This document shows, piece by piece, positions 38-49,811 of a stretch of DNA of 64,000 nt (within the stretch, counting starts at the first letter, position 1; each line of letters begins with the position of its first letter). Location: the IMG/VR virus record IMGVR_UViG_3300036766_002289, positions 62,001-126,000 of that record, one strand, 5' to 3'. The notes under the pieces were generated by a model. It was not told the origin of the DNA and did not search any database. It saw nothing but the letters and a program-made list of their open reading frames with translations. Both the position numbers and the translations under genes were made by a program.

Positions 38-106
38 GGGGGCAGTCTATGGGTAGCCGTTGGCCTTTGCAAGGCTGACTATGGGGATCGTAACCCCATG
101 CCTCCA
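38..106 (+). tRNA. tRNA-Ala(UGC), atypical (no clear D-stem, 7-bp anticodon stem, T-loop ATCGTAA)
   Basis: Acceptor GGGGGCA/TGCCTCC with G3:U70 and A73; anticodon loop TTTGCAA; T-stem TGGGG/CCCCA. Confidence 0.75.
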
Positions 107-3041: not shown

Positions 3042-3487
3042 GAAAATATAAGAAGTTAAGGACAGAAGGCTATACAATACTTGGTCTTTATAAGATTGGT
3101 AGAGAAAATGGCCTGGCTCCAGATGAAATTGTGATAATGTTGGATAAAGTTATGCCAGAGGAAGGGCATGATGATGTTGTTAAGTTTATGCGAAAAATGG
3201 AGTTTGGTGAAGAATATTGTATGACTTGTCAGAAATTTTTCATAGATAAGCCAGGAGAATGGTGTGATTTTCATTGCAAGGATTGCCAGAAAAGAATTGA
3301 CAAAATGTGGGAAAAGGTCTATGATGCATGTGAGGAATCTGGTGAAGAATTGTCCAGTGACGAGCAGGTTAGGTTTAGTATTTTAATTGGAATGGTTACG
3401 GCGATGGATAGCTTAGTTGTACAGGAGGCAGATGGGACACAAGAGAACCAAGGGAGTGAGACAAAAACTTCGTTCAAAACAGAGTGA
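3029..3487 (+). CDS. hypothetical Zn-finger protein
   Basis: CxxC..C..HCxxC. Confidence 0.6.
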   Translation: MANIRKYKKLRTEGYTILGLYKIGRENGLAPDEIVIMLDKVMPEEGHDDVVKFMRKMEFGEEYCMTCQKFFIDKPGEWCDFHCKDCQKRIDKMWEKVYDACEESGEELSSDEQVRFSILIGMVTAMDSLVVQEADGTQENQGSETKTSFKTE

Positions 3488-3644
3488 GAAAACAAAACAG
3501 TATGCGGTAGTGCCAGCTATTATTGTTAATAGTGAAATTCGTGGGGATGTGGAAATTTTAAGCAAACGTGGTGACGGTAGGTTTGAATGCAAAGTTGGGG
3601 AATCGAGTATCCAATACTTAAGTAAAAAAGAGATAGATAAACTT

Positions 3645-3723
3645 GTCGTCAGAAGCTAATTTCGCATGGCGCGGGGCTGGTCTGCAAAATCAGTGCTAAT
3701 AGGTTCGAATCCTACTGACGATT
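3645..3723 (+). tRNA. tRNA-Cys(GCA), atypical 8/4-like fold
   Basis: GTCGTCAG/CTGACGAT acceptor, U73; CTGGT-CTGCAAA-ATCAG anticodon arm; TAGG-TTCGAAT-CCTA T-arm. Confidence 0.7.
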
Positions 3724-4630: not shown

Positions 4631-4702
4631 GGTCCCGTAGTCTAATGGAGAGGCACTTGTTTCCTAAACAAGGTTATGCAGGTTCGATTCCTGTCGGGAC
4701 TA
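4631..4702 (+). tRNA. tRNA-Arg(CCU)
   Basis: Cloverleaf; CTTGT-TTCCTAA-ACAAG; GGTTCGATTCC. Confidence 0.93.
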
Positions 4703-4708
4703 CTTTAG

Positions 4709-4782
4709 GGGGTCACAATGGGCGGTAAAATCATAAACCGAAAGGCTTGATTTTATTAAAGGTTCAATTCCTTTTGACTCCA
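4709..4782 (+). ncRNA. tRNA-like RNA with Ala acceptor and no normal anticodon loop
   Basis: GGGGTCA/TGACTCC-A (G3:U70); TAAAATCA/TGATTTTA stem enclosing a 14-nt loop with CC-GAAA-GG; AAAGG-TTCAATT-CCTTT T-arm. Confidence 0.65.
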
Positions 4783-4784
4783 CT

Positions 4785-4970
4785 ATGACGTTAGATAATA
4801 TAGTAAAATCTTATGTGACAGCAGGATTGACAACAAAGGTATACGATGCTCCGAAAGATGCTGTTACCTTTGACAAAATGATTGTTATTTTCAGTACACC
4901 AGCCTGTAAATCCATTAAAATGGTAATGCTGCATAGCAGTAAAACTCAAGGCATCGTAGGTAAGTTTTAG
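4785..4970 (+). CDS. hypothetical protein
   Basis: ORF. Confidence 0.45.
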   Translation: MTLDNIVKSYVTAGLTTKVYDAPKDAVTFDKMIVIFSTPACKSIKMVMLHSSKTQGIVGKF

Positions 4971-5001: not shown

Positions 5002-5352
5002 ATGGTTGTTGATTTTGAGATTACGTTGAACAGATTTGGGTTTTATCGGCTCACAAACAAAGTTCAGATAGCGTTTGTTAGGATATCTTGGTGGGATATT
5101 CCAAATAAACACTCTGTTAGTTTTGAAATAAACTGGAAAAACATGACTAAGCAAGAGATGGAATTATCGCAAGCATTTACTGAGTTGGAATATAAAGTAA
5201 AAGCTTTAAAAATGGCTCATGATATTAGTGAAAGTTTAGGTTCGCAGAAGCATAGTTATTGGATTGCTTATATTGAGCCAGTGGAGAAACGTCTGGCTGA
5301 TTTTAAGACTAAATTTTACAAAATTATGCTAGAGATGGAAGAACCTGAATAA
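5002..5352 (+). CDS. hypothetical protein; C-terminal half (from ATG 5143) belongs to a small helical paralog family
   Basis: MTKQEMELSQAFTELE resembles 6272..6442. Confidence 0.55.
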   Translation: MVVDFEITLNRFGFYRLTNKVQIAFVRISWWDIPNKHSVSFEINWKNMTKQEMELSQAFTELEYKVKALKMAHDISESLGSQKHSYWIAYIEPVEKRLADFKTKFYKIMLEMEEPE

Positions 5353-6612: not shown

Positions 6613-6772
6613 AGTAGAATTAATAGACGTGCTTCTAAAGCTTGAACAAGCAGTAACTGTGGTAATATCTAACTATGGGTCTGGCAACGCTTCGTCAATG
6701 AACTTAAGTAAAGAATTAAATAATTTTAAAGTGTGCTTATTTAAACTTTTAGCCAGTAATGCCGAGGATTGA
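6599..6772 (+). CDS. small helical hypothetical protein (paralog family)
   Basis: MNKIEVELIDVLLKLE..FKVCLFKLL. Confidence 0.55.
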   Translation: MNKIEVELIDVLLKLEQAVTVVISNYGSGNASSMNLSKELNNFKVCLFKLLASNAED

Positions 6773-9798: not shown

Positions 9799-10191
9799 AT
9801 GAACCAGGAACAAATCATCTCACAAGTTAAGACAGTCGTAACGGATTGCCTTAATGTTGATGAGGACGAAATCACTCTAGATTCTAGGCTTAGTGCCGAT
9901 TTGGGGGCAGAGTCCATCGACTTTTTGGATTTGACATTCAGACTTGAAAGACAATTCAATATAAGAATCCCACATGGCGACTTGTTCCCAACTGACCTTT
10001 TTAGGGATTTAGATAATTGTGTCGAAGGTGGTAAAGTTACACCTAAAGGAATTGACTTGCTGAAGAGTAAAATTCCTTTTGCTGATTTTTCTGAGTGGGA
10101 GAAAAACCCACAATATGCTACCGTTACGGATTCCTTTACCGTTGGGACTTTGGTAAAGTATATTGGGATGCAGCAAACCATTATCAGCTAG
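9799..10191 (+). CDS. acpP: acyl carrier protein with long insertion
   Basis: ADLGAESIDFLDLTFRLE phosphopantetheine motif; FTVGTLVKYI. Confidence 0.85.
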   Translation: MNQEQIISQVKTVVTDCLNVDEDEITLDSRLSADLGAESIDFLDLTFRLERQFNIRIPHGDLFPTDLFRDLDNCVEGGKVTPKGIDLLKSKIPFADFSEWEKNPQYATVTDSFTVGTLVKYIGMQQTIIS

Positions 10192-13395: not shown

Positions 13396-13467
13396 CTTGG
13401 ACTCCTTTCAACCTATATAGTAATATGACCTCACGGTTTTGTGCAACAGGAAATTGAAAAAAATATT

Positions 13468-14244
13468 ATGAATAAGATTATCATTAAAAACGAGAAGCAA
13501 ATAAGAGGTATTCGTAAAAGTTGTCAAATCGCAGCAGCAACTTTAGAATATGCTAAAAAATCTATTGCTGTAGGAATGACTACAGAAGAATTGGACAGGG
13601 CTATAGAAAACTTCATTAGGTCTAAGGGGGCGACTTCAGCGACATTAGAGTATAAAGGTTTTCATAAAGGTCAGCCAAAATTTCCAAAGAGTTGCTGTAT
13701 TTCAGTAAATGAAGAAGTCTGTCATGCAATTCCAGATAGCTATATTATCAAAAACGGAGACATAGTTAGTATAGATGTAGCTGTTATCTTGAATGGTTAT
13801 TATGGTGATAATTGTACTACAGTTCCAGTTGGTAACATATCAGATGACGCCAGACATTTGATTGAGGTCGCTAAAAAATGCTTAGATTTAGGAATAAGAC
13901 AAGTTGCTCCTGGTCGCAAAACTGGTGTGATTGGTCAAGCAATTTATCAATATGCAATTTTACAGGGCTGTACAATAGTAGAGGAATTTTGTGGTCATGG
14001 TGTAGGAATGGCTTTTCATGAACAACCACAAATTCTTCATGTTGCAAAACAAGATGATGGTGATATAATGAAGCCTGGGATGATTTTCACCATAGAACCG
14101 ATGGTCAATTTGGGCGGTCCTGAAGTAATAATGGATAATGATGACCAATGGACCGTTAGAACCGTGGACCAAAGTTTGTCGGCTCAATTTGAGCATTCGG
14201 TTCTGGTAACGACTAATGGATATGAAATACTAACTTTACCATGA
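13468..14244 (+). CDS. map: methionine aminopeptidase type I
   Basis: CCISVNEEVCHAIP..SIDVAV..GDN..CGHGVG..FHE..TIEPMVN..SAQFEHS. Confidence 0.96.
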   Translation: MNKIIIKNEKQIRGIRKSCQIAAATLEYAKKSIAVGMTTEELDRAIENFIRSKGATSATLEYKGFHKGQPKFPKSCCISVNEEVCHAIPDSYIIKNGDIVSIDVAVILNGYYGDNCTTVPVGNISDDARHLIEVAKKCLDLGIRQVAPGRKTGVIGQAIYQYAILQGCTIVEEFCGHGVGMAFHEQPQILHVAKQDDGDIMKPGMIFTIEPMVNLGGPEVIMDNDDQWTVRTVDQSLSAQFEHSVLVTTNGYEILTLP

Positions 14245-17954: not shown

Positions 17955-17983
17955 TTGACGCAGTGCATTTTTTTTGCTACTAT
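17955..17983 (+). promoter_or_regulatory. sigma70 promoter of purC, probably leaderless
   Basis: TTGACG-17 nt-TACTAT, with the ATG at 17990 about 7 nt downstream. Confidence 0.65.
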
Positions 17984-17989
17984 TGGGGA

Positions 17990-18880
17990 ATGAGCAATAT
18001 CTATGAAACAAATGTACCTAATTTTGTTTGCAAACGGGGCAAGGTACGGGACACTTATGCCTATGGTGATACGATGTTAATCATCGTAACTACCGATAGA
18101 ATAAGTGCTTTTGATTGGGTATTTCCAAATACCACAATTCGAGATAAAGGAAAAATTCTTCAAGGTATATCATCTTATTGGGCTGATGCTTTGAATTTAA
18201 GGTATCATGAGATCAATACTGACTTGAACCATCTGCCAGAAGATTTTAGAAAACCAGAATTTGAAGGCAGGGCAATGTTGGTGGAAAAAGCGGATGTTAT
18301 CCCTTTTGAATGCGTGGTTCGTGGATACTTAGCTGGTTCAGCATGGAAAGAATACAAGCAAACAGGTGAAGTTTGCGGTATTAAGTTGCCAAGCGGTCTT
18401 AAAGAAAATCAACATCTTATAAAGCCACTTTTTACACCCGCTACTAAAGCAGAATCAGGGCACGATCAAAATGTAACTTTTGACTATATGGCAGGTAAGA
18501 TTGGTCTTGACTTAGCCGCCGAACTAGAATCTTTGAGTTTGGATATTTATTCAGAAGCATCCCAGATAGCCTGGAATCGTGGTATCATAATAGCCGATAC
18601 TAAGTTCGAATTTGGTGTATTGCCACATTCTAGCAATGTATTGATACTGATAGACGAAGTTTTAACACCCGATAGCTCTCGTTTCTGGCCATTAGAAGAT
18701 TATAAATTAGATGGGCCTATTAACTCATTCGATAAACAATTTGTGCGTGATTTCATAGAGCAATCAGGGTGGGATAAGAATAGTCCCCCACCAGCATTAC
18801 CAGAAGACGTTATAATGAAGACTAGGGACAAATACTTAGAAGCTTATGAAAAAATAACGGGGCACAGTTTATGCAAATAA
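17990..18880 (+). CDS. purC: SAICAR synthetase
   Basis: RGKVRDTY..TDRISAFD..ECVVRGYLAGS..FTPATKA..IADTKFEFG..DEVLTPDSSRFW..SFDKQFVRD. Confidence 0.97.
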   Translation: MSNIYETNVPNFVCKRGKVRDTYAYGDTMLIIVTTDRISAFDWVFPNTTIRDKGKILQGISSYWADALNLRYHEINTDLNHLPEDFRKPEFEGRAMLVEKADVIPFECVVRGYLAGSAWKEYKQTGEVCGIKLPSGLKENQHLIKPLFTPATKAESGHDQNVTFDYMAGKIGLDLAAELESLSLDIYSEASQIAWNRGIIIADTKFEFGVLPHSSNVLILIDEVLTPDSSRFWPLEDYKLDGPINSFDKQFVRDFIEQSGWDKNSPPPALPEDVIMKTRDKYLEAYEKITGHSLCK

Positions 18881-33402: not shown

Positions 33403-34467
33403 ATGTTAAGACAAACAATTGCAGTAGCTCATAGCACTACACCTTTTGCTACCTTGTATCCTTGGGGTGGTACTTATTGGACCATAATAGCTAATCCTTC
33501 AACGTTACCTGCTAGTACTGGACAAGATATCAAATGGTCTCCAGATGGAGCTTATGTTGCAATAGGTCATAGCACCACTCCATTTGTAAGTGTATATCCT
33601 TGGACTGGTCAATTTGGGGCTAAATTTGCAGACCCATCAACTTTGCCTCCAGCCGCAGGGAATTGCGTTGCGTGGAGTCCTCGCGGTGATTTCATTGCAG
33701 TTAGTAGCAGTACTACTCCATTCATAAGTGTATATCCTTGGAGTAGTGCTGGATTTGGTGCAAAGGTTGCAGACCCTTCAACTTTACCTACTGGTACTGG
33801 TGTTTTCGGAATGGTTTGGTCTCCTGATGGCAATGCTATTGCACTCGCTGTAAATGATATTAGTAATTTCATCATTGTGTATTCTTGGAGTAGTGCTGGG
33901 TTTGGCTTTAGATATGCTAATTATGTTACCCCGTCAAACACTGGAACTGGAAATTCTGTTGCGTGGTCTCCAGATGGAACTGCAATTGGTGTTACCATTT
34001 TTAACACTCCAGGCATATATACGTGGCCTTGGAGCGGCATTACTGGTTTTGGTGCTAGAATTGCTGATCCTACAACTCTTCCTGGTGGTGCAGGAACTAA
34101 CGGATGCAGTGGTTTTGCATGGTCTCCAGATGGGGCTAATATTGCTATGACGGTCAATGATACTCCTTTTATAGCGGCGTATCCTTGGACTACAAAATTC
34201 GGGGCTAAATTTGCTGATCCATCTACTTTGCCTGTCAGTGGAAACCTTGTTAAACGTAATACTCTTGCATGGTCCCCAGATCAAAAATATGTTACGGGCA
34301 CAACGTCCACTACTCCTTTTATATTTGTTTATCCTTGGAGCAATAGTACTGGACTAGGTACTAAAATTGCTGATCCTTCAACTTTACCAGCAGGGGCTAC
34401 TGGAGGTTGTGCATGGCTTAATAAGCCAATATTACCTAATGCAAAGGTCGTATTTGGCACTGGTTAA
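33403..34467 (+). CDS. 7-bladed WD40-like beta-propeller, paralog 1
   Basis: YPW..FGAK.ADPSTLP..AWSPDG repeats. Confidence 0.85.
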   Translation: MLRQTIAVAHSTTPFATLYPWGGTYWTIIANPSTLPASTGQDIKWSPDGAYVAIGHSTTPFVSVYPWTGQFGAKFADPSTLPPAAGNCVAWSPRGDFIAVSSSTTPFISVYPWSSAGFGAKVADPSTLPTGTGVFGMVWSPDGNAIALAVNDISNFIIVYSWSSAGFGFRYANYVTPSNTGTGNSVAWSPDGTAIGVTIFNTPGIYTWPWSGITGFGARIADPTTLPGGAGTNGCSGFAWSPDGANIAMTVNDTPFIAAYPWTTKFGAKFADPSTLPVSGNLVKRNTLAWSPDQKYVTGTTSTTPFIFVYPWSNSTGLGTKIADPSTLPAGATGGCAWLNKPILPNAKVVFGTG

Positions 34468-34480
34468 GGATATATAAATT

Positions 34481-35411
34481 ATGCTAAAGTTGACATTGGC
34501 GGTTTCGTCAAACTTAACACCGTTTATACAAGCCTATCCTTTCAGTGGAAATTTTTGGCAAAAAGTACCTGATCCTTCAACTCTGCCTGGCGGTTCCCAA
34601 GGAACAGGCACCTGTTGGTCGCCGCGAGGCAGTTATGTTGTGGCACTAAGTAATGCATCTCCTTTTATCCAAGCCTATCCTTGGACTGGTCAATTTGGGG
34701 CTAAAGTTGCAGACCCTACAACTTTACCTCCTGGAGAATGTTTAGATGCAGCATGGCGACCAGATGGCAATTTTATTGCAACGGCTGGATTCACCGCACC
34801 ATGTATAACTGCGTATCCTTGGACTGGAACTGGATTTGGTGCTAAAGTTGCAGACCCAGCCATAGTTCCTTCTAGCACAGGTTGGAGTGTTGCATGGAGT
34901 CCAGATGGCAAGTTTATTGCTGTTGGTAGCGATGTTTCTCCTTTTTTACAAGTATATCCTTGGACTGGAGGTGGGTTTGGTGCTAAAGTTGCAGACCCTT
35001 CAGTAATATCTGTTGGACAATGTTGGGGGGTAAAATGGTCTCCAGCTGGAGATTATATTGCTGTTGGTTGCTCTAATACGCCTTTTATACAAGCTTATTC
35101 TTGGAGCAATAGGTCATAACACTTCGCCTTTCATGAGCGTATATCCTTGGAGTGCTGGATTTGGAGCTAAAGTTGCTGATCCTTCAACTTTACCTGCTGG
35201 CAATGGCTGGCGTATTGCTTGGACACCGCAAGGTGATTATATTGTTTTAGGGCATGATACTACACCATTTGTTAGTGTCTATCCTTGGACTGCTGGGTTT
35301 GGGGCTAAGCTTGCTGATCCTAGCACATTACCTGGAGATAGTGGTTTTGGTGTGGCTTGGCTCCCTCCACCAACATCATATGTTGCCAAGGCATTATTCG
35401 GTTCAGGTTAA
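34481..35411 (+). pseudogene. beta-propeller paralog 2, frameshifted by a deletion at ~35106-35110
   Basis: ORFs 34481..35119 and 35058..35411 join at GCAAT microhomology. Confidence 0.7.
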
Positions 35412-35422
35412 TATATAATAAT

Positions 35423-36469
35423 ATGCTTCAAACTTCAGTTGCAATCGGCTCGGATACGACCTCGCCTTTTTTGTTTGCTTATCCTATAAATGGACAATTT
35501 TATACTAAATACGCAGACCCATCAACGATTCCAACTGGTACTGGTTCTAATGGTGTTGCGTGGAGTCCTGATGGTTCTTATTTTGCTATCGTACATAATG
35601 CATCACCGTTTGTAAGTGTATATCCTTGGACAGGGCAATTTGGTGCTAAAGTTGCTGATCCATCTACTTTGCCCCCCAATACGACAGATACTGTTTTTTG
35701 GTCGCCTGACATGAAATATATTGCTGTTACTTTTCAAGTGACGCCTTTTATATATGTATATCCTTGGAGTAGTGCTGGGTTTGGGGCTAGATTTGCTAAC
35801 CCATCAACGCTTCCTGCTGGTATTGGTTATTGTTCTGCATGGTCTCCTGATGGGCAGTTTCTTGCTGTTAGTCAGCTTACTTCTCCATTTATAGGTGTAT
35901 ATCCTTGGAGTAGTGCTGGATTTGGGCCTAGATTTGCTAACCCATCAACGCTTCCTGCTGGGGCATGTCGTTGGGTTACATGGTCCCCAGATGGAGCATT
36001 TATTGGAATGGGTGTTACAAACACGCCATTTGTAGCAGTGTATCCTTGGACTACTCAAGGATTTGGTGCTAAAATTGCGAACCCTACAACTTTGCCTCCT
36101 GCTTCATCTGGTTGTACAGGCATGTCATGGAGTCCAGATGGAAACTATGTTGGTTTGGTTGGTGATTCTAGTCCTTTCATAAGAGTTTATAACTGGACTA
36201 GTGCTGGATTTGGAACTCCTGTCGCTGATCCTAGTACTTTGCCCAATAGTGTTGCTCGCGGAATTGCATGGTCTCCTGATGGAACCTATGTTGGTGCTTC
36301 TGTCGCAGTGAATCCTGAGATAGTCGTATACCCTTGGAGTGCTGGATTCGGGGCCAAGCTTCCTGATCCTGCAACTGTGCCTGCTGGGACTTCTTTAACA
36401 ATTACATTTACTGGTTCTCAGGCTAAGCCGAAAGCAAGAAAACCATTTAACTCAATTGACTATATATAA
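35423..36469 (+). CDS. beta-propeller paralog 3
   Basis: Same repeat; MLQTSVAIG start. Confidence 0.85.
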   Translation: MLQTSVAIGSDTTSPFLFAYPINGQFYTKYADPSTIPTGTGSNGVAWSPDGSYFAIVHNASPFVSVYPWTGQFGAKVADPSTLPPNTTDTVFWSPDMKYIAVTFQVTPFIYVYPWSSAGFGARFANPSTLPAGIGYCSAWSPDGQFLAVSQLTSPFIGVYPWSSAGFGPRFANPSTLPAGACRWVTWSPDGAFIGMGVTNTPFVAVYPWTTQGFGAKIANPTTLPPASSGCTGMSWSPDGNYVGLVGDSSPFIRVYNWTSAGFGTPVADPSTLPNSVARGIAWSPDGTYVGASVAVNPEIVVYPWSAGFGAKLPDPATVPAGTSLTITFTGSQAKPKARKPFNSIDYI

Positions 36470-36471
36470 TC

Positions 36472-37500
36472 ATGCTTAAACAAGTCCTTGCAGTGGCTCA
36501 TTTTTCAACTCCTTTTGTAAGTGTATACCCCTGGAGTAATAATTTTTGGGGGAAAGTTGCCGATCCTTCGACTTTGCCACCTAATCTTGGCCACGGTGTT
36601 GCATTTAGTCCAGATGGTGCTTTTATTGCTGTGGCACATAGTACAACTCCTTTTGTAAGTGTATATCCTTGGACTGGACAATTTGGTGCTAAAGTTGCAG
36701 ACCCCACAACACTTCCTACTGGTTCTGCCAATAAGGTTGCTTGGAATCCTGCTGGCAATTATATTGCCGTTGCACATGGAACTTCCCCTAGTATAAGTGT
36801 TTATCCTTGGACGACGGCAGGATTTGGTGCTAAAGTTGCGGACCCTTCAACTTTGCCAAATGGTGATTGTTTTGGTCTCGCTTGGTCGCCTAAAGGTGAT
36901 TACATTGCCGTAGGGTTCAATAATAACTCTCCTTTTATAAGTGTGTATCCTTGGAGCAATGGATTTGGTGCTAAGTTTGCTAATCCTTCTGCACCGCTTG
37001 GTGGGACTGGAGAAGGTGTCGCATTTTCCCCAGATGGTAATTATATAGCTGTGGCTCAAGATAGCAGTCCTTATATAAATGCATATCCTTGGAGTAGTGC
37101 AGGATTTGGAAGTATAGTTACCGCACCCACCACTCTTCCTGGTTTACAAGCCTTCGCTGTAAGCTGGTCTCCAGATGGGGCTTATATAGGGGTAGGACAC
37201 GGTAATTCTCCGTTCGTAAGTGTTTACCCTTGGAGTGCTGGGTTTGGTGCCAGACTTGCTAATCCTAGTACATTGCCGCCTAATCAGGTTACAAATTTAG
37301 CATGGTCTCCAGATGGAGCTTATGTTGCTCTGGCACATGCAACTAATCCTGATGTAAGTGTATATCCTTGGAGTGCTGGATTTGGGTCTAAGCTAGCTGA
37401 CCCTTCTACTTTGCCAGTTGGAGGTGGTAATAGCGTTGCTTGGTTTAATCCAAATGTTATAAATCACCCAAAATCTTTATTTGGCACTAATATATTTTAG
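36472..37500 (+). CDS. beta-propeller paralog 4
   Basis: Same repeat. Confidence 0.85.
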   Translation: MLKQVLAVAHFSTPFVSVYPWSNNFWGKVADPSTLPPNLGHGVAFSPDGAFIAVAHSTTPFVSVYPWTGQFGAKVADPTTLPTGSANKVAWNPAGNYIAVAHGTSPSISVYPWTTAGFGAKVADPSTLPNGDCFGLAWSPKGDYIAVGFNNNSPFISVYPWSNGFGAKFANPSAPLGGTGEGVAFSPDGNYIAVAQDSSPYINAYPWSSAGFGSIVTAPTTLPGLQAFAVSWSPDGAYIGVGHGNSPFVSVYPWSAGFGARLANPSTLPPNQVTNLAWSPDGAYVALAHATNPDVSVYPWSAGFGSKLADPSTLPVGGGNSVAWFNPNVINHPKSLFGTNIF

Positions 37501-37506
37501 AGGAAT

Positions 37507-39842
37507 ATGTTAAAATTATCACTTGCAGTAGCACATACCACGACACCCTTTATAAGTGTATACCCTTGGAATGGCGGATTCTGGACGAAGAATGCTAATC
37601 CTAGTACATTACCTGCGGGTGATTGTGTCAATACTGCATGGTCTCCTAATGGTGCTTATGTAGCAGTCACAACTGGCACTTCTCCTTATATAGCTGTCTA
37701 TCCTTGGACAGGGCAGTTTGGTGCTAAATTTGCTGATCCACAGGTTTTACCTGCTGTTCCTGGTGATGTACAATGGTCTCCTAAAGGAGATTTTATTGCT
37801 GTAACTCACACTGTCGCTAATTACATACATGTTTATCCTTGGAACAGTTCTGGTTTTGGTGCGCCAGTAGCGGACCCAGCAACGCCACCTACTGCAAATA
37901 CCATAGGTGTTGCATGGCGTCCCCAAGGTGATTATATTGCTGTTGCCTATGGTGCATCACCTTGGTTAAATGTTTATTCTTGGAATAGTGCTAGTGGATT
38001 TGGTGCCAAAGTTGCTGATCCTAGTACATTGCCAACTGGTATTGGGAATTGTGTTACGTGGTCTCCTTTGGGAGATTATGTTGCCATAGGACATGCCACT
38101 TCCCCTAATATAAGTGTATATCCTTTTTCAAATGGTACATTAGGTGCTAAAATAGCTGACCCTAGTACATTACCTGGGAATACTTGTGTAGGGATACAAT
38201 GGTCTCCACTTGGTAATTTTATTGGTGTTGCTGTCATTGTTTCTCCTTTCGTAGTTGTATATCCTTGGAGTGCTGGATTTGGTGCCAAAGTAGCTGATCC
38301 TAGTACATTACCAGCCAGTACTGGCAGGGGATTATCGTGGTCTCCTGCACAAGATTACCTTGCAGTCGCTCATGATAGTACGCCATTTATAAGTGTATAT
38401 CCGTGGACTGGCACTTTTGGTTCTAAGTTGGCCAACCCTGGAGTATTGCCAGCTAGTGATGGTAAGGACGTTGCGTGGCTTAATGTTCCACAAGTATCCA
38501 AAACAAAGACTTTATTTAATCCGTTTAATCCTAAATCCATATCTGGTTTGGTTTCTTGGCATGATGCTAGTGTTCAGTCATCCCTTTGGCAGAATAGTAC
38601 CAGAACTACGCCTGTAACATCTAATAACGATCCAATTGGTGGCTGGGATGATTTAAGTGGTAATGGATATCACATTATTCAGTCTACGAATGGCAGTAGG
38701 CCACTTTACAAAACTAGTATGCTTAATAACTTGCCAGTGATCCGTGCGGACGGTGTTGACGATTACTTAACTAATGCATCATACACTAATGGCACTACTT
38801 GGTCTATTTTTGTGGTTTGTAGAAGGCTTACCAATAATGTTAATTGTAGATTTCTATGTATTTCTCTAAATGCATCCCCAGGTGGTTCCACTAGTATTAA
38901 TTTATTCAACGACACTACTGGAGTTTTTGGTTATTATGGTGATAACGTGGCTGGTGCCCCTGTATTTTCTCCAGGCAATGATACAATATTTTCTCTTGCA
39001 GAACTTTTATTAACTGGTGGTGGCACGGGAAACGCATATTACAATGGTAATTTGGCAGGCACTTGGACGATGCCAACTCTGTTTTGTCAGCTGCGAATAG
39101 AATCAAAGTAGAAAACTATTTAATGAAAAAATGGAGTCCATTTACATTTACTCCAAATCTAATTCCTGGTTTGTCAGCGTGGTATGATTCAACAAAATTA
39201 ACTTCATTATGGCAAAATAGTACTAGAACAACATCTGTGAAAGTAGATGGTGATTTAGTTGGTGCTTGGGATGATTTGAGTGGGAACGGCAATCATGTTA
39301 TACAATCTGTTAATATAAATAGACCGACATATAAAACTGCTATACAAAATGGCAATCCAATTGTTCGTTTTACTTTTGCAAACGGGACGTTCTTGGCCAA
39401 GACATATGGCACTCTTTTAAGTCAACCAAGTACAATTTTTTGGGCTGGATCATTTGGAAGTCATATAAACACTTTCATTTATGATGGTGTGGATGCAACT
39501 AATAGAAATGTTTTGTGTCATGGACCAAGTGGTAGTGCTGTAAATTTTGGAGCTTTTGCTGGTGTGTCCTTGGAAGCTGCACACGCCATACCAATTGCGG
39601 CAGGGGTATGGTCTGTCGTATTTAATGGTGGTTCAAGTCAGATATGGCAGGATGGAGCTTCATTTACTTCTGGTAATGCGGGGGCGGCAGCAATGGGTGG
39701 TCTAACGATGGGAGCCGCATATACTGGTGGGGCCAATGCTGATGAAGATACTTTTGAATTGATTATATACAACAGGTTGTTAACCACGGATGAGCGACAG
39801 CAGGTGGAAAGGTATCTAAAACTTAAATGGGGAACTCCATAA
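37507..39842 (+). CDS. beta-propeller paralog 5 fused to two LamG/ConA-like lectin domains; frameshift or deletion at ~39074-39078
   Basis: GLVSWHDAS..WDDLSGNG and GLSAWYDS..WDDLSGNG..IIYNRLLT..VERYL; split across ORFs 37507..39111 and 39063..39842. Confidence 0.7.
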
Positions 39843-48725: not shown

Positions 48726-49811
48726 TCAACTGGCGTCCTTTAATTTTTCTTTTGATTGCCTTACCATGACGGCTTCTTCTTTTGTTTTGTAATAGCCAAG
48801 ATGCTTTTTGCCCATATGTGCTGACCATTTTTTCTTGTCTTTGTTCCAAGAAACGCCTACCACCCCAGACCTATTGCGAAAGTTTTTGATTTTCCATCTT
48901 TTTCTTAAAACGTTGTAAATGTAAAGTTTAGGATAATTTATTTCTTTGGCTATTTCATCTAAATTTAATCCATTATCAAAAAGGGCCATTATGAGTTGCT
49001 TAGTTTCTTCTGAAGAGACATTGAATTTATATTCTGGGTATTTTTCTAAACTAATCTTATATTCCATGCATGGATGCGGGATATAGGGTTTTATCAAGTC
49101 GATAAAACCTAAATATGAACTAGTGCCTATGTATATTTTTGGAAAGTTCGCATGGCAATTTGTTATGCCAAGCGTTTTAATTTTTGAAATTAGGAATTCT
49201 ATTTCTTTAGCAGTAAAGCAGTTAACACATAATTCTGCGCTTCTTTTTGCTGACATATTGCACCCGTCATCCATGAACCATATCGCTAAAGAAAATGGTG
49301 TTAATAATAAATCTTGTGGCACTATCTTAATTTTTTTATTATCTTTTAAGACGTAATTATTATTTTGATCTCGCTTATACCATTTATATTCCAACTCCGT
49401 GAACGTCGGATGACAAATTGTTCGTAATGTAAAATTATCTGTGCCATTAATTATTAACTCACAAGGCGTTTTTTTGGTTTGAAAGAACTTCTTACTAAAT
49501 GGCAGCAATTCTTGAAACTTCCAATAACAATATTCTTTCTGGGGTGTGCCGTGCCCTTCTTGGAATTGTGAATTATAGGTTTTTCTTCTGGGAGTGGTAA
49601 GACACCCATCCCCTAAAAGGGAGCCTACAATAATTTCTTGTTGTCTTTCTGTAAGTTGAATCGCAAATTTGATATCGGTTTTTGTGGGAAGCCCATATCT
49701 TAATACTAAGTTATAAACTGAGCTATGAGAAATTTTGAAAAATTCAATGATTTCAGATACTGAATGATATTCATAGTAGTTTACAAAATCTTCTTTATTG
49801 ATATTTAACAT
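48726..49811 (-). CDS. LAGLIDADG homing endonuclease with C-terminal AP2 domain
   Basis: IIVGSLLGDG; LAIWFMDDG; SGVVGVSWNKDKKKWSA..HLGYY. Confidence 0.9.
   Translation of the reverse strand: MLNINKEDFVNYYEYHSVSEIIEFFKISHSSVYNLVLRYGLPTKTDIKFAIQLTERQQEIIVGSLLGDGCLTTPRRKTYNSQFQEGHGTPQKEYCYWKFQELLPFSKKFFQTKKTPCELIINGTDNFTLRTICHPTFTELEYKWYKRDQNNNYVLKDNKKIKIVPQDLLLTPFSLAIWFMDDGCNMSAKRSAELCVNCFTAKEIEFLISKIKTLGITNCHANFPKIYIGTSSYLGFIDLIKPYIPHPCMEYKISLEKYPEYKFNVSSEETKQLIMALFDNGLNLDEIAKEINYPKLYIYNVLRKRWKIKNFRNRSGVVGVSWNKDKKKWSAHMGKKHLGYYKTKEEAVMVRQSKEKLKDAS

What the first reader, a model, noticed from the sequence alone, without database searches (positions are those of the whole stretch)
4709..4782. 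Anticodon-less, alanine-accepting tRNA-like RNA
Seen: Ala identity elements (G3:U70, A73) and a canonical T-arm. The D region is a 10-nt stemless loop, and an 8-bp stem ends in a 14-nt loop holding a CC-GAAA-GG hairpin instead of an anticodon loop. It sits 6 nt after tRNA-Arg. The architecture resembles the tRNA-like domain of tmRNA without its mRNA domain and parallels the odd tRNA-Ala at 38-106 (both contain AUGGG in the D-loop and end CCACTA). Inference: a non-decoding Ala carrier for ribosome rescue/tailing, a decoy for host defence enzymes, or a non-ribosomal Ala donor.
Basis: partly seen in the sequence, partly recalled or inferred. Interest (0 to 1): 0.68.

Follow-up and report, generated by a model that had tools for sequence, protein, structure and literature searches.

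The report
Anticodon-less alanine mini-tmRNA of megaphages
This is a real, conserved 74-base phage gene for a tRNA-shaped RNA with alanine charging marks and no anticodon: a stripped-down relative of the ribosome-rescue RNA tmRNA, of a kind known from one mycobacteriophage.

Summary
Window 4709-4782 (+) folds as described. It has a 7-bp acceptor stem with G3:U70 and A73, an 8-nt stemless D-loop and a 10-bp helix. That helix ends in UAAA / CC-GAAA-GG / CU instead of an anticodon loop, and a canonical T arm follows.

It is a gene, not decay. Six homologs turned up in related ~590-600 kb phages. Across the seven, 98.8% of base-pair cells are paired and 14 of 24 pairs show compensatory changes. 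G3:U70 and A73 are invariant.

It belongs with the "TLD-only" (tag-less) mini-tmRNAs known from mycobacteriophage DS6A. Models built from either group find the other.

The window subtype differs. It lacks the UUCGAC...GGAC junction that contacts SmpB. Its clade also carries canonical full-length tmRNA genes, and the one complete genome has no detectable SmpB.

Most likely it is cut out with the neighbouring tRNA-Arg, CCA-tailed and alanylated, and acts in or against ribosome rescue. Whether it uses SmpB is open. Verdict: a new variant of a known kind.

The parts
4631..4702 (+). tRNA-Arg(CCU), upstream neighbour and probably on the same transcript
   Evidence: ARAGORN; Rfam tRNA 57.5 bits. The same neighbour lies upstream in L021, L147, L148 and LR756511.1.
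4703..4708 (+). 6-nt spacer (CUUUAG) between the tRNA-Arg discriminator and G1 of the element. The presumed RNase P site is at 4708/4709.
   Evidence: Sequence. The spacer is only 50% conserved against L021. Cleavage is inferred, not shown.
4709..4715 (+). Acceptor stem, 5' strand GGGGUCA (G3 at 4711)
   Evidence: Pairs with 4775-4781. G1:C72, G2:C71, G3:U70 and G4:C69 are invariant in 7 of 7 homologs. Pairs 5 and 6 change on both sides.
4716..4723 (+). Stemless D-loop analogue CAAUGGGC. Its GG (4720-4721) is the likely partner of the T-loop.
   Evidence: Unpaired in the minimum-free-energy fold. CAAUGG is conserved in 6 of 7 homologs; LR756511.1 has CA-CGG.
4724..4733 (+). Helix P2, 5' strand GGUAAAAUCA. 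It takes the place of the anticodon stem, or of tmRNA helix 2.
   Evidence: 10 bp with 4748-4757. 8 of the 10 pairs show changes on both sides among 7 homologs, and 98.6% of cells are paired.
4734..4747 (+). Cap of P2: A-rich internal loop UAAA, 2-bp hairpin CC/GG with a GAAA tetraloop, then CU. There is no anticodon loop.
   Evidence: UAA(A/G) is present in 7 of 7 homologs. One homolog changes the first hairpin pair from C:G to G:C. 42 of 74 other phage TLD-only RNAs fold to the same stem / A-rich loop / short hairpin.
4748..4757 (+). Helix P2, 3' strand UGAUUUUAUU. It abuts the T stem with no nucleotide between.
4758..4774 (+). T arm AAAGG-UUCAAUU-CCUUU
   Evidence: GGTTCAATTCC motif at 4761-4771. 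3 of the 5 stem pairs change on both sides, and 100% of cells are paired.
4775..4782 (+). Acceptor stem, 3' strand UGACUCC (U70 at 4778) plus discriminator A73 (4782)
   Evidence: The next bases are CUA, so CCA is not encoded and would have to be added after transcription. 24 of 71 related phage RNAs encode CCA and 11 have CUA.
4785..4970 (+). Conserved 61-aa ORF of unknown function. Its ATG starts 2 nt after A73. It was used as the handle to find homologous loci.
   Evidence: 64% amino-acid identity to the L021 copy. Nucleotide differences fall 14/14/37 by codon position. No Pfam hit. In L149 two tRNA genes separate it from the element, so the adjacency is not obligatory.

Best explanation
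Window 4709-4782 is a functional gene for a 74-nt non-decoding RNA with alanine identity. It is a tag-less 'tRNA-like-domain-only' derivative of tmRNA (a mini-tmRNA), of the kind first noted in mycobacteriophage DS6A. Here it occurs as a divergent subtype, so far seen only in a clade of ~590-600 kb phages.

Proposed working, step by step:
1. It is transcribed together with tRNA-Arg(CCU) (inferred).
2. RNase P cuts at its 5' end, the 3' end is trimmed, and CCA is added because the gene reads CUA (inferred).
3. AlaRS charges it with alanine through G3:U70 and A73. This follows from the established rule that AlaRS needs only the acceptor helix. It is not tested here.
4. It has no anticodon, so it cannot read codons. 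Like the tRNA-like domain of tmRNA, it could enter only ribosomes with an empty A site.
5. It has no resume codon or tag ORF. It would therefore either compete with tmRNA and dampen tagging, or accept the stalled peptide without marking it for proteolysis. An artificial TLD-only RNA was reported to inhibit tmRNA (PMC4131195, citing Mao 2009; PMC11915505 attributes the result to the DS6A form). Tag-less mitochondrial tmRNAs are thought to still help with incomplete mRNAs (PMC11915505).

How sure each part is (confidence in parentheses):
- Shown: it is a conserved structured RNA gene with Ala identity marks (~0.9).
- Supported: it is kin to DS6A-type TLD-only RNAs (~0.7).
- Inferred only: it acts on trans-translation (~0.4).
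- Open: whether it uses SmpB.
For: - Structure and identity marks.
- Conservation: homologs in L021 (IMG/VR), in L147-L150 (found through the neighbouring protein, not through any RNA pattern), and in GenBank LR756511.1.
- Covariation over the seven: 98.8% of cells paired, 14 of 24 pairs with changes on both sides, score 0.536 against 0.189 in shuffles (0 of 500), slid controls at most 0.121.
- Selection: the element is 86.7% identical to the L021 copy, against 64.5% for the adjacent ORF.
- Family link, forward: model R1 was built from 45 other phage TLD-only RNAs, with the window and L021 left out. It scores the window element 45.5 bits (E 5e-9). The window's true tRNAs score at most 19.7, and tRNA-Ala genes that share the search pattern score 28.5-33.
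- Family link, to the precedent: R1 scores the published DS6A element 66.6 bits.
- Family link, reverse: model R2, built from the window type, hits DS6A at 39.5 bits and core members at 27-44 bits. The tRNA-Ala of a related phage scores 21.5.
- A shared idiosyncratic cap on P2: an A-rich internal loop plus a short GC hairpin.
- Some core members pass Rfam tmRNA RF00023 end to end with the middle deleted (51.4 bits against a gathering score of 47).
- Literature: DS6A 'TLD only' and inhibition of tmRNA by a similar TLD-only molecule (PMC4131195; PMC11915505 says the DS6A form).
Against: - The window subtype lacks the UUCGAC...GGAC junction of tmRNA and of the DS6A-type family. That junction includes the equivalents of U17 and A334, which form the SmpB Trp122 pocket (PMC8363625). 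In their place are two G:U pairs, and nothing lies between P2 and the T stem.
- Rfam tmRNA does not reach its gathering score. The best hit in that clan is tRNA at 23.5 bits.
- Relatives of this phage also carry canonical full-length tmRNA genes: LR756511.1, tag ANPEFAMAA; L164, L165 and L171, tags ending in YALAA; L166. A pure anti-tmRNA decoy would then be odd.
- LR756511.1 has no detectable SmpB. The same query finds SmpB in other huge phages.
- Part of the R1 score comes from features that my collecting pattern fixed (GGGG, AUGG, the T-loop, UCCA).
- There are no expression, processing or charging data.
Confidence: 0.55

Rival explanations
1. It is an SmpB-independent alanine carrier with a job outside canonical trans-translation. 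It is charged by AlaRS but has lost the SmpB-contact nucleotides. It would then serve as an Ala donor for a non-ribosomal transferase, or as a sponge or decoy for enzymes that act on tRNA acceptor ends. A third possibility is a rescue route that uses another adaptor.
For: - All 7 window-type copies lack the UUCGA/GAC signature. Full-length tmRNAs of the same phage clade keep it.
- The D-loop is reduced to little more than the GG needed for the elbow.
- No SmpB in LR756511.1.
Against: - No aminoacyl-tRNA-dependent transferase or any other partner gene recurs next to the element or next to the wider family.
- Architecture and reciprocal model hits tie it to RNAs that do keep the SmpB signature.
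- Host SmpB could still bind in a different way.
Confidence: 0.2
2. It descends from a phage tRNA-Ala rather than from tmRNA. The D arm collapsed and a structured insert replaced the anticodon loop. The likeness to TLD-only RNAs would then be convergence on 'acceptor + T arm + G3:U70'.
For: - Phage tRNA-Ala genes with shrunken D arms and the same AUGGG motif exist: window 38-106, L002, L054 and others.
- Rfam tRNA is the best-scoring family of its clan, at 23.5 bits.
- The tmRNA junction motif is absent.
Against: - The element shares the specific P2 cap (UAAA(G), a CC...GG hairpin, then 1-2 nt) with DS6A-type RNAs. tRNA-Ala does not have it.
- R1 and R2 score it 12-25 bits above tRNA-Ala genes.
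- Its acceptor and T arm are no closer to the phage's own tRNA-Ala.
- In LR756511.1 the D-loop start CACGG matches that phage's own tmRNA D-loop ACACGG.
Confidence: 0.15
3. It is a cis-acting processing or translation signal. A tRNA-like fold would be kept only so that RNase P and 3' processing define the 5' end of the mRNA for the 61-aa ORF, which starts 2 nt after A73.
For: The ATG lies 2 nt after the discriminator in the window, L021, L147, L148 and L150.
Against: - In L149 the element is separated from that ORF by two tRNA genes.
- In LR756511.1 it lies 175 nt downstream of tRNA-Arg(CCU), in a different local arrangement.
- A true tRNA already sits just upstream.
- Invariant G3:U70 and A73 and the conserved P2 cap are not needed for punctuation.
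Confidence: 0.05
4. It is a decaying tRNA or tmRNA pseudogene with no function.
For: - Standard tRNA and tmRNA finders do not call it.
- CCA is not encoded.
Against: - Seven copies in diverged phages, with 14 pairs compensated and 2 unpaired cells out of 168.
- It is conserved better than the adjacent coding sequence.
Confidence: 0.03

Closest known systems
Mycobacteriophage DS6A 'TLD-only' tmRNA (tmRNA Website Phage__Mycobacterium.9; Hudson, Lau & Williams 2014, PMC4131195; Mao et al. 2009)
   Same: - Phage-borne, ~75-80 nt, acceptor stem with G3:U70 and A73.
- Stemless D-loop and a T arm.
- One helix in place of the anticodon arm, capped by an A-rich internal loop and a short GC hairpin.
- No tag ORF.
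- I located it at JN698994 28478-28557, unannotated, at 66.6 bits with R1. The window-type model R2 hits it at 39.5 bits.
   Different: - DS6A and the ~70 metagenomic relatives keep the tmRNA junction UCGAC...G(G/C)AC and a 12-nt D-loop.
- The window type has an 8-nt D-loop, two G:U pairs at the junction, and no nucleotide before the T stem.
- The window type sits in a tRNA cluster of a ~590 kb phage whose clade also has full-length tmRNA.
Bacterial tmRNA (SsrA), tRNA-like domain, Rfam RF00023
   Same: - Alanine identity (G3:U70, A73).
- D-loop without a stem, with a GG.
- T arm with UUCRAUU.
- A helix leaving where the anticodon arm would be.
   Different: - No pseudoknots, resume codon or tag ORF.
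- The SmpB-contact nucleotides are missing (the equivalents of U17 and A334, and the UUCGAC/GGAC motif; PMC8363625).
- Below the Rfam gathering score.
- CCA is not encoded.
CDS-less organellar tmRNAs (jakobid and oomycete mitochondria, Rfam RF02544; ~65-bp Mallomonadaceae plastid forms; PMC11915505)
   Same: A tmRNA reduced to little more than the tRNA-like domain. It is thought still to work with SmpB on incomplete mRNAs, without tagging.
   Different: - Cellular (organelle) genes that co-occur with a nucleus-encoded SmpB, not phage genes.
- Sequence relationship to the window element was not tested here. The tool hides lower-scoring families of the same Rfam clan.
Canonical tRNA-Ala(UGC), including the phage's own copy at window 38-106
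   Same: Acceptor stem GGGG..., G3:U70, A73, the ending ...CUCCACUA, and AUGGG in the D region.
   Different: tRNA-Ala has a 7-nt anticodon loop with UGC. The element has none. R1 and R2 score tRNA-Ala genes 12-25 bits lower.

Membership tests
tmRNA tRNA-like domain (RF00023) | Acceptor stem with G3:U70 and discriminator A73 (alanine identity) | tested here: met
   Invariant in 7 of 7 homologs. Five of these were found without any RNA pattern that requires it.
tmRNA tRNA-like domain (RF00023) | T arm with a 5-bp stem and a UUCRAnU loop; D-loop without a stem, carrying GG | tested here: met
tmRNA tRNA-like domain (RF00023) | Conserved junction UUCGAC...GGAC, including the SmpB contacts (E. coli A15, U17, C18, G19, A334; PMC8363625) | tested here: not met
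   The window has ...AUGGGC then GG, paired to UU. There is no GAC on either side and no nucleotide before the T stem. The clade's own full-length tmRNAs keep the motif.
tmRNA tRNA-like domain (RF00023) | Reaches the Rfam gathering score (47 bits) | tested here: not met
   No RF00023 hit is listed. The best hit in the clan is tRNA at 23.5 bits. By contrast L004 scores 51.4 bits.
tmRNA tRNA-like domain (RF00023) | mRNA-like domain with a resume codon and tag ORF | tested here: not met
   Only 14 nt cap helix P2. ARAGORN finds no tmRNA in the window.
tmRNA tRNA-like domain (RF00023) | Alanylation by AlaRS; binding of SmpB and EF-Tu | not testable with these tools
   Needs biochemistry.
Phage TLD-only mini-tmRNA (DS6A type) | 62-83 nt in the order acceptor, stemless D-loop, single helix P2, T arm; no anticodon loop and no ORF | tested here: met
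   Family covariation: 94.6% of cells paired, score 0.693 against 0.152 in shuffles.
Phage TLD-only mini-tmRNA (DS6A type) | P2 capped by an A-rich 5' internal loop and a short GC hairpin | tested here: met
   The window has UAAA / CC-GAAA-GG / CU. 42 of 74 family members fold the same way, and 31 of those 42 have AA in the loop. DS6A has ...GAAAA-CCGC-ACGC-GG....
Phage TLD-only mini-tmRNA (DS6A type) | Recognised by a covariance model of the family built without it, and the reverse | tested here: met
   R1 scores it 45.5 bits, E 5e-9. R2 hits DS6A at 39.5 bits and core members at 27-44 bits. Two caveats: the score is below the core range of 62-88 bits, and part of it comes from bases fixed by the collecting pattern.
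Phage TLD-only mini-tmRNA (DS6A type) | Keeps the tmRNA junction motif (UCGAC...GGAC) | tested here: not met
   This is why I call it a variant rather than a plain member.
Canonical tRNA-Ala | 7-nt anticodon loop with an Ala anticodon; a D stem; Rfam tRNA at or above 29 bits | tested here: not met
   No anticodon loop and no D stem. Rfam tRNA scores 23.5 bits. No ARAGORN call.

The most novel reading that the evidence does not exclude
The ~600-kb phages that already carry a canonical tmRNA also keep a second, SmpB-signature-less, alanine-charged non-decoding RNA. This RNA would work by a mechanism not yet described. One possibility is a minimal 'add one Ala and stop' rescue RNA: all 7 copies have UAA at the start of the P2 cap. 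Others are an SmpB-independent entry into stalled ribosomes, or an Ala donor outside the ribosome. More broadly, tag-less mini-tmRNAs would be a widespread phage tool for steering host ribosome rescue that ARAGORN, the standard tmRNA caller, misses.
Probability: 0.15. Interest if true: 0.85.

Novelty: new variant of a known kind. Interest (0 to 1): 0.6.

Why it matters
tmRNA-SmpB is the main ribosome-rescue system of bacteria, and how phages deal with it is poorly understood. The open literature I could search names one phage TLD-only RNA (DS6A) and reports that such a molecule inhibits tmRNA.

Three results here extend that picture:
- They are nearly absent from 185,579 cellular genomes: 12 hits, all on MAG contigs.
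- ARAGORN, which huge-phage surveys used to assign tmRNAs (PMC7162821), calls none of them.

The window adds a distinct subtype in some of the largest known phages. It sits beside a full phage tmRNA and lacks the SmpB-contact motif.

If it is charged and active, it is a natural experiment on the minimum needed for tRNA-like entry into ribosomes without decoding. It would also show how phages tune tagging against rescue. And it is a practical warning for annotating phage tRNA clusters.

Tried and rejected
- my first viral pattern had a wrong gap length and found nothing. One scan was wasted.
- window-type-specific patterns and the downstream ORF gave only the window's own contig and L021 in IMG/VR.
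- the single metagenome scan gave only unrelated tRNA-like hits.
- blastn of the element against GenBank phages found no match. LR756511.1 was found only through a nearby tRNA hit plus the covariance model.
- a neighbour-gene survey of 74 TLD-only loci found no recurrent partner. The top clusters were a 451-aa protein with a weak metallophosphatase hit in 9 loci, RusA, portal, terminase and NlpC/P60. I concluded these RNAs are stand-alone cargo.
- SmpB search: tblastn with E. coli SmpB against the window and every locus held at that point (about 1.1 Mb) gave nothing below E = 1, and nothing in LR756511.1. Pfam scans of 40 window ORFs found no SmpB, AlaRS or CCA-adding enzyme. Only 64 kb of a ~590-kb genome is visible, so absence from the window itself means little.
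- A hidden tag ORF starting at GCC after UAAA: reading frames in family members are inconsistent. Some run to the 3' end without a stop, so I rejected this (inspection sequences).
- Stop codon in the P2 cap as a universal feature: present in about two thirds (my hand count: 30 of 45) of the core alignment. It is therefore not defining, although it is 7 of 7 in the window type.
- attP or integration remnant: rejected. The element holds both acceptor strands and there is no integrase nearby. ORF 5002-5349 has only a sub-threshold Flp_N hit.
- ARAGORN's tmRNA call in L064, which overlaps a TLD-only element, has an atypical tag and is probably false.
- Promoter and terminator scans near the element were no better than shuffles.
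- Mao et al. 2009, Jacob et al. 2004 and Hafez et al. 2013 are not held in the library. Their content is cited only through PMC4131195 and PMC11915505.
Full report
**1. What is in the sequence**

The window is part of IMG/VR contig IMGVR_UViG_3300036766_002289 (390 kb). The same genome appears elsewhere as a 590,099-bp contig. No close cultured relative exists.

Positions 4709-4782 on the + strand read, in order:
- acceptor 5' strand GGGGUCA
- 8 unpaired nt, CAAUGGGC
- a 10-bp helix, GGUAAAAUCA with UGAUUUUAUU
- the cap on that helix: UAAA, the hairpin CC-GAAA-GG, then CU
- T arm AAAGG-UUCAAUU-CCUUU, directly abutting the helix
- acceptor 3' strand UGACUCC, then A73

This gives G1:C72, G2:C71, G3:U70 and G4:C69.

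The minimum-free-energy fold is exactly this structure: -20.2 kcal/mol, z = -2.84.

The element starts 6 nt after the discriminator of tRNA-Arg(CCU) (4631-4702). It ends 2 nt before the ATG of a 61-aa ORF.

ARAGORN and Rfam at gathering thresholds do not report it. With permissive filters, Rfam tRNA aligns only the acceptor and T arm, at 23.5 bits against a gathering score of 29.

**2. It is a conserved RNA gene**

A pattern scan of viral contigs found one close homolog, L021 7788-7862, on a 373-kb contig. It has the same synteny: small ORF, tRNA-Arg(CCU), element, 61-aa ORF.

Between the window and L021 there are 10 differences.
- Six of them form three compensated pairs.
- One is A:U to G:U.
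- None breaks a pair.
- Identity is 86.7% for the element. It is 64.5% for the ORF, whose differences are biased to the third codon position at 14/14/37.

Further RNA patterns found nothing more in viral or metagenome contigs. I therefore searched with the downstream protein.
- Six proteins came back.
- Their contigs L147-L150 each carry the element.
- These four were found with no RNA criterion at all.

A seventh copy lies in GenBank LR756511.1, an unannotated 595,163-bp uncultured phage, at L151 5050-5124. Its P2 helix has an entirely different sequence but pairs throughout, apart from an A/G mismatch at the base of the helix.

On the seven-sequence alignment:

| Measure | Value |
|---|---|
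| Pair cells that are paired | 98.8% |
| Pairs with changes on both sides | 14 of 24 |
| of which in P2 | 8 of 10 |
| of which in the T stem | 3 of 5 |
| of which in the acceptor | 2 of 7 |
| of which in the cap hairpin | 1 of 2 |
| Covariation score | 0.536 |
| Same score in shuffles | 0.189 (0 of 500 reach the observed value) |
| Same score with partners slid 1-3 columns | at most 0.121 |

G3:U70, A73, the D-loop GG and the UAA at the start of the cap are invariant.

The alignment was fitted to the model, which favours pairing. The six-sequence MAFFT alignment gives the same picture: 99.3% paired and 12 pairs with changes on both sides.

In L149 two tRNA genes lie between the element and the ORF. 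The element is therefore not merely a leader of that ORF.

**3. What family it belongs to**

After removing true tRNAs, 71 distinct sequences of 62-83 nt remained. ARAGORN calls none of them.

They share one design:
- an acceptor stem with G3:U70
- a 12-nt D-loop, nnAUGGnUUCGA
- a 6-8-bp helix
- an A-rich internal loop
- a 3-4-bp GC hairpin
- the return strand of the helix
- GAC
- the T arm

This is the tRNA-like domain of tmRNA with helix 2 cut short. L004 aligns to Rfam tmRNA RF00023 from end to end with 304 model positions deleted. It scores 51.4 bits, above the gathering score of 47.

The family covaries strongly: 94.6% of cells paired, score 0.693 against 0.152 in shuffles.

The literature has one phage precedent. 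Hudson, Lau and Williams list 'Mycobacterium phage DS6A (TLD only)'. They note that a similar molecule strongly inhibits tmRNA, perhaps by titrating SmpB (PMC4131195). The 2025 tmRNA database paper repeats this and adds ~65-bp CDS-less plastid forms and tag-less mitochondrial tmRNAs (PMC11915505).

I built model R1 from 45 family members, leaving out the window and L021. It finds the DS6A element at JN698994 28478-28557, an unannotated gap between gp33 and gp34, at 66.6 bits. The metagenomic family is therefore the DS6A kind.

R1 scores:

| Target | Bits |
|---|---|
| Window element | 45.5 (E 5e-9) |
| L021 | 51.1 |
| Core family | 62-88 |
| tRNA-Ala genes that share every pattern-fixed base | 28.5-33 |
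| The window's true tRNAs | at most 19.7 |

Model R2, built from six window-type sequences, gives the reciprocal result:

| Target | Bits |
|---|---|
| LR756511.1 copy (not in training) | 61.6 |
| DS6A | 39.5 |
| Core family members | 27-44 |
| tRNA-Ala of LR756511.1 | 21.5 |

Beyond the acceptor and T arm, both groups share the odd cap on P2. The window has UAAA / CC-GAAA-GG / CU and LR756511.1 has UAAAG / CC-GAAAA-GG / AA. Typical core members have UAAAG / CCA-CAAG-UGG / AA.

I conclude that the window element is a divergent subtype of the DS6A-type TLD-only RNAs. An origin from a D-arm-reduced phage tRNA-Ala is not fully excluded.

**4. Where it departs from the family**

In E. coli, SmpB Trp122 sits in a pocket made by A15, U17 and A334. 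G19 stacks on SmpB, and G19C abolishes binding (PMC8363625). These nucleotides lie in the UUCGAC...GGAC junction that tmRNA and the core TLD-only family conserve.

The window type has only 8 D-loop nucleotides. It has two G:U pairs where the GA/AG junction should be, and nothing between P2 and the T stem. In L148 the second G:U is A:U. In LR756511.1 the first is an A/G mismatch.

So a defining feature of the tmRNA tRNA-like domain was tested and not met.

**5. Genomic setting of the clade**

I fetched LR756511.1 whole.
- It is a relative of the window's phage: 35 of 74 window ORFs of at least 100 aa have tblastn hits in it, at 23-84% identity.
- It encodes 63 tRNAs.
- It encodes one canonical full-length tmRNA of 353 nt, with tag ANPEFAMAA and the TLD motifs ...ACACGGCUUCGA... 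and ...GAC-UUGGG-UUCAAUU-CCCAA....

Relatives found through the gene next to that tmRNA also carry full-length tmRNAs.
- L164, L165 and L171 have tags ending in YALAA.
- L166 comes from the same sample as L021.

E. coli SmpB used as a tblastn query finds SmpB in Lak phages and in the 634-735-kb uncultured phages. It finds nothing in LR756511.1, in the window, or in any TLD-only locus held.

No protein family recurs next to TLD-only RNAs.

A stricter version of the pattern found only 12 hits in 185,579 species-representative genomes, all on MAG contigs. The family is essentially virus-borne.

**6. Mechanism**

Shown: a conserved, structured, tRNA-shaped RNA gene with intact alanine identity marks and no anticodon, related to TLD-only mini-tmRNAs.

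What follows from established knowledge:
- AlaRS recognises G3:U70 in the acceptor helix regardless of the anticodon.
- RNase P and the CCA-adding enzyme act on such substrates.
- EF-Tu binds the acceptor and T arm.

So the RNA is very likely processed, CCA-tailed (the gene reads CUA, as in 11 other family members) and alanylated.

Inferred: it cannot decode, so its only ribosomal entry would be the empty A site of a stalled ribosome, as for tmRNA. Without a resume codon it would do one of two things.
- It could compete with tmRNA. The TLD-only inhibition result supports this.
- It could accept the peptide without adding a degradation tag. The tag-less organellar tmRNAs are the analogy.

The subtype has lost the SmpB signature and coexists with a phage tmRNA. 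I therefore give the trans-translation role only about 0.4, and keep an SmpB-independent role as the main rival.

**7. Verdict**

- It is a new variant of a known kind.
- Interest is moderate to high for specialists in tmRNA and phage translation. The prevalence of ARAGORN-invisible mini-tmRNAs in phages appears not to have been surveyed in the literature I could search. The megaphage subtype also raises a mechanistic question that can be tested directly.

Noticed in passing
window 38-106 (+): tRNA-Ala(UGC) missed by ARAGORN and Rfam. It has a 7-bp anticodon stem with loop UUUGCAA, a shrunken D arm and an unusual T-loop, AUCGUAA. It is the ortholog of L021 2844-2917, which has a normal D arm but the same odd T-loop.
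   Followed up: partly
window 3646-3722 (+): A tRNA-Cys(GCA)-like element: acceptor UCGUCAG/CUGACGA, loop CUGCAAA, T arm with GGUUCGAAUCC, and an over-long D region. It overlaps the stop codon of ORF 3417-3659. ARAGORN does not call it, and Rfam gives only a weak tRNA-Sec hit (22.4 bits). L021 has a tRNA-Cys that ARAGORN does call, at 6623-6707.
   Followed up: partly
24 of them encode CCA, and 22 lie within 500 nt of a tRNA. ARAGORN calls none. In 185,579 GTDB species genomes a stricter pattern hit only 12 MAG contigs. The DS6A copy is unannotated in GenBank.
   Followed up: yes
LR756511.1 341280-341632 (-); L164 5597-5953; L165 5035-5391; L171 4057-4411; L166 5465-5820: The same megaphage clade carries canonical full-length tmRNA genes, with tags ANPEFAMAA, ATPYEYALAA, ATQNEYALAA and ATHNEYALAA. 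No SmpB is detectable in the complete LR756511.1 genome. The L166 copy is seen only by Rfam (103.8 bits). Its T-loop is AGCGAAG and its D-loop has no GG.
   Followed up: partly
L009 10167-10234 (-): An Ala-identity acceptor (G3:U70, A73) and mini D-loop, combined with a normal-looking 7-nt loop CUUAUAA (anticodon UAU). This may be an alanine-accepting tRNA that reads AUA.
   Followed up: no
L021 7705-7785: The tRNA-Arg(CCU) of the sister phage has an 8-nt insertion in the variable region relative to window 4631-4702.
   Followed up: no
L064 5905-6228 (-): ARAGORN calls a 324-nt tmRNA with an atypical tag (AWDYNPMWVQCSA). Its 3' part is a TLD-only element. The call is probably false.
   Followed up: no
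window 9799-10188, 13441-14241, 17963-18877, 33403-39108, 48726-49808: Other cargo of the phage: an acyl-carrier-protein-like gene, a methionine aminopeptidase (M24), a SAICAR synthetase, four tandem WD40/beta-propeller proteins, and a LAGLIDADG homing endonuclease.
   Followed up: no
L102 7467-8819 (-) and 8 other TLD-only loci: A ~451-aa protein with a weak metallophosphoesterase hit (E 5e-4, below the Pfam cut-off) lies on the same strand as the TLD-only RNA, usually close upstream, in 9 loci. It may only reflect related phages.
   Followed up: no
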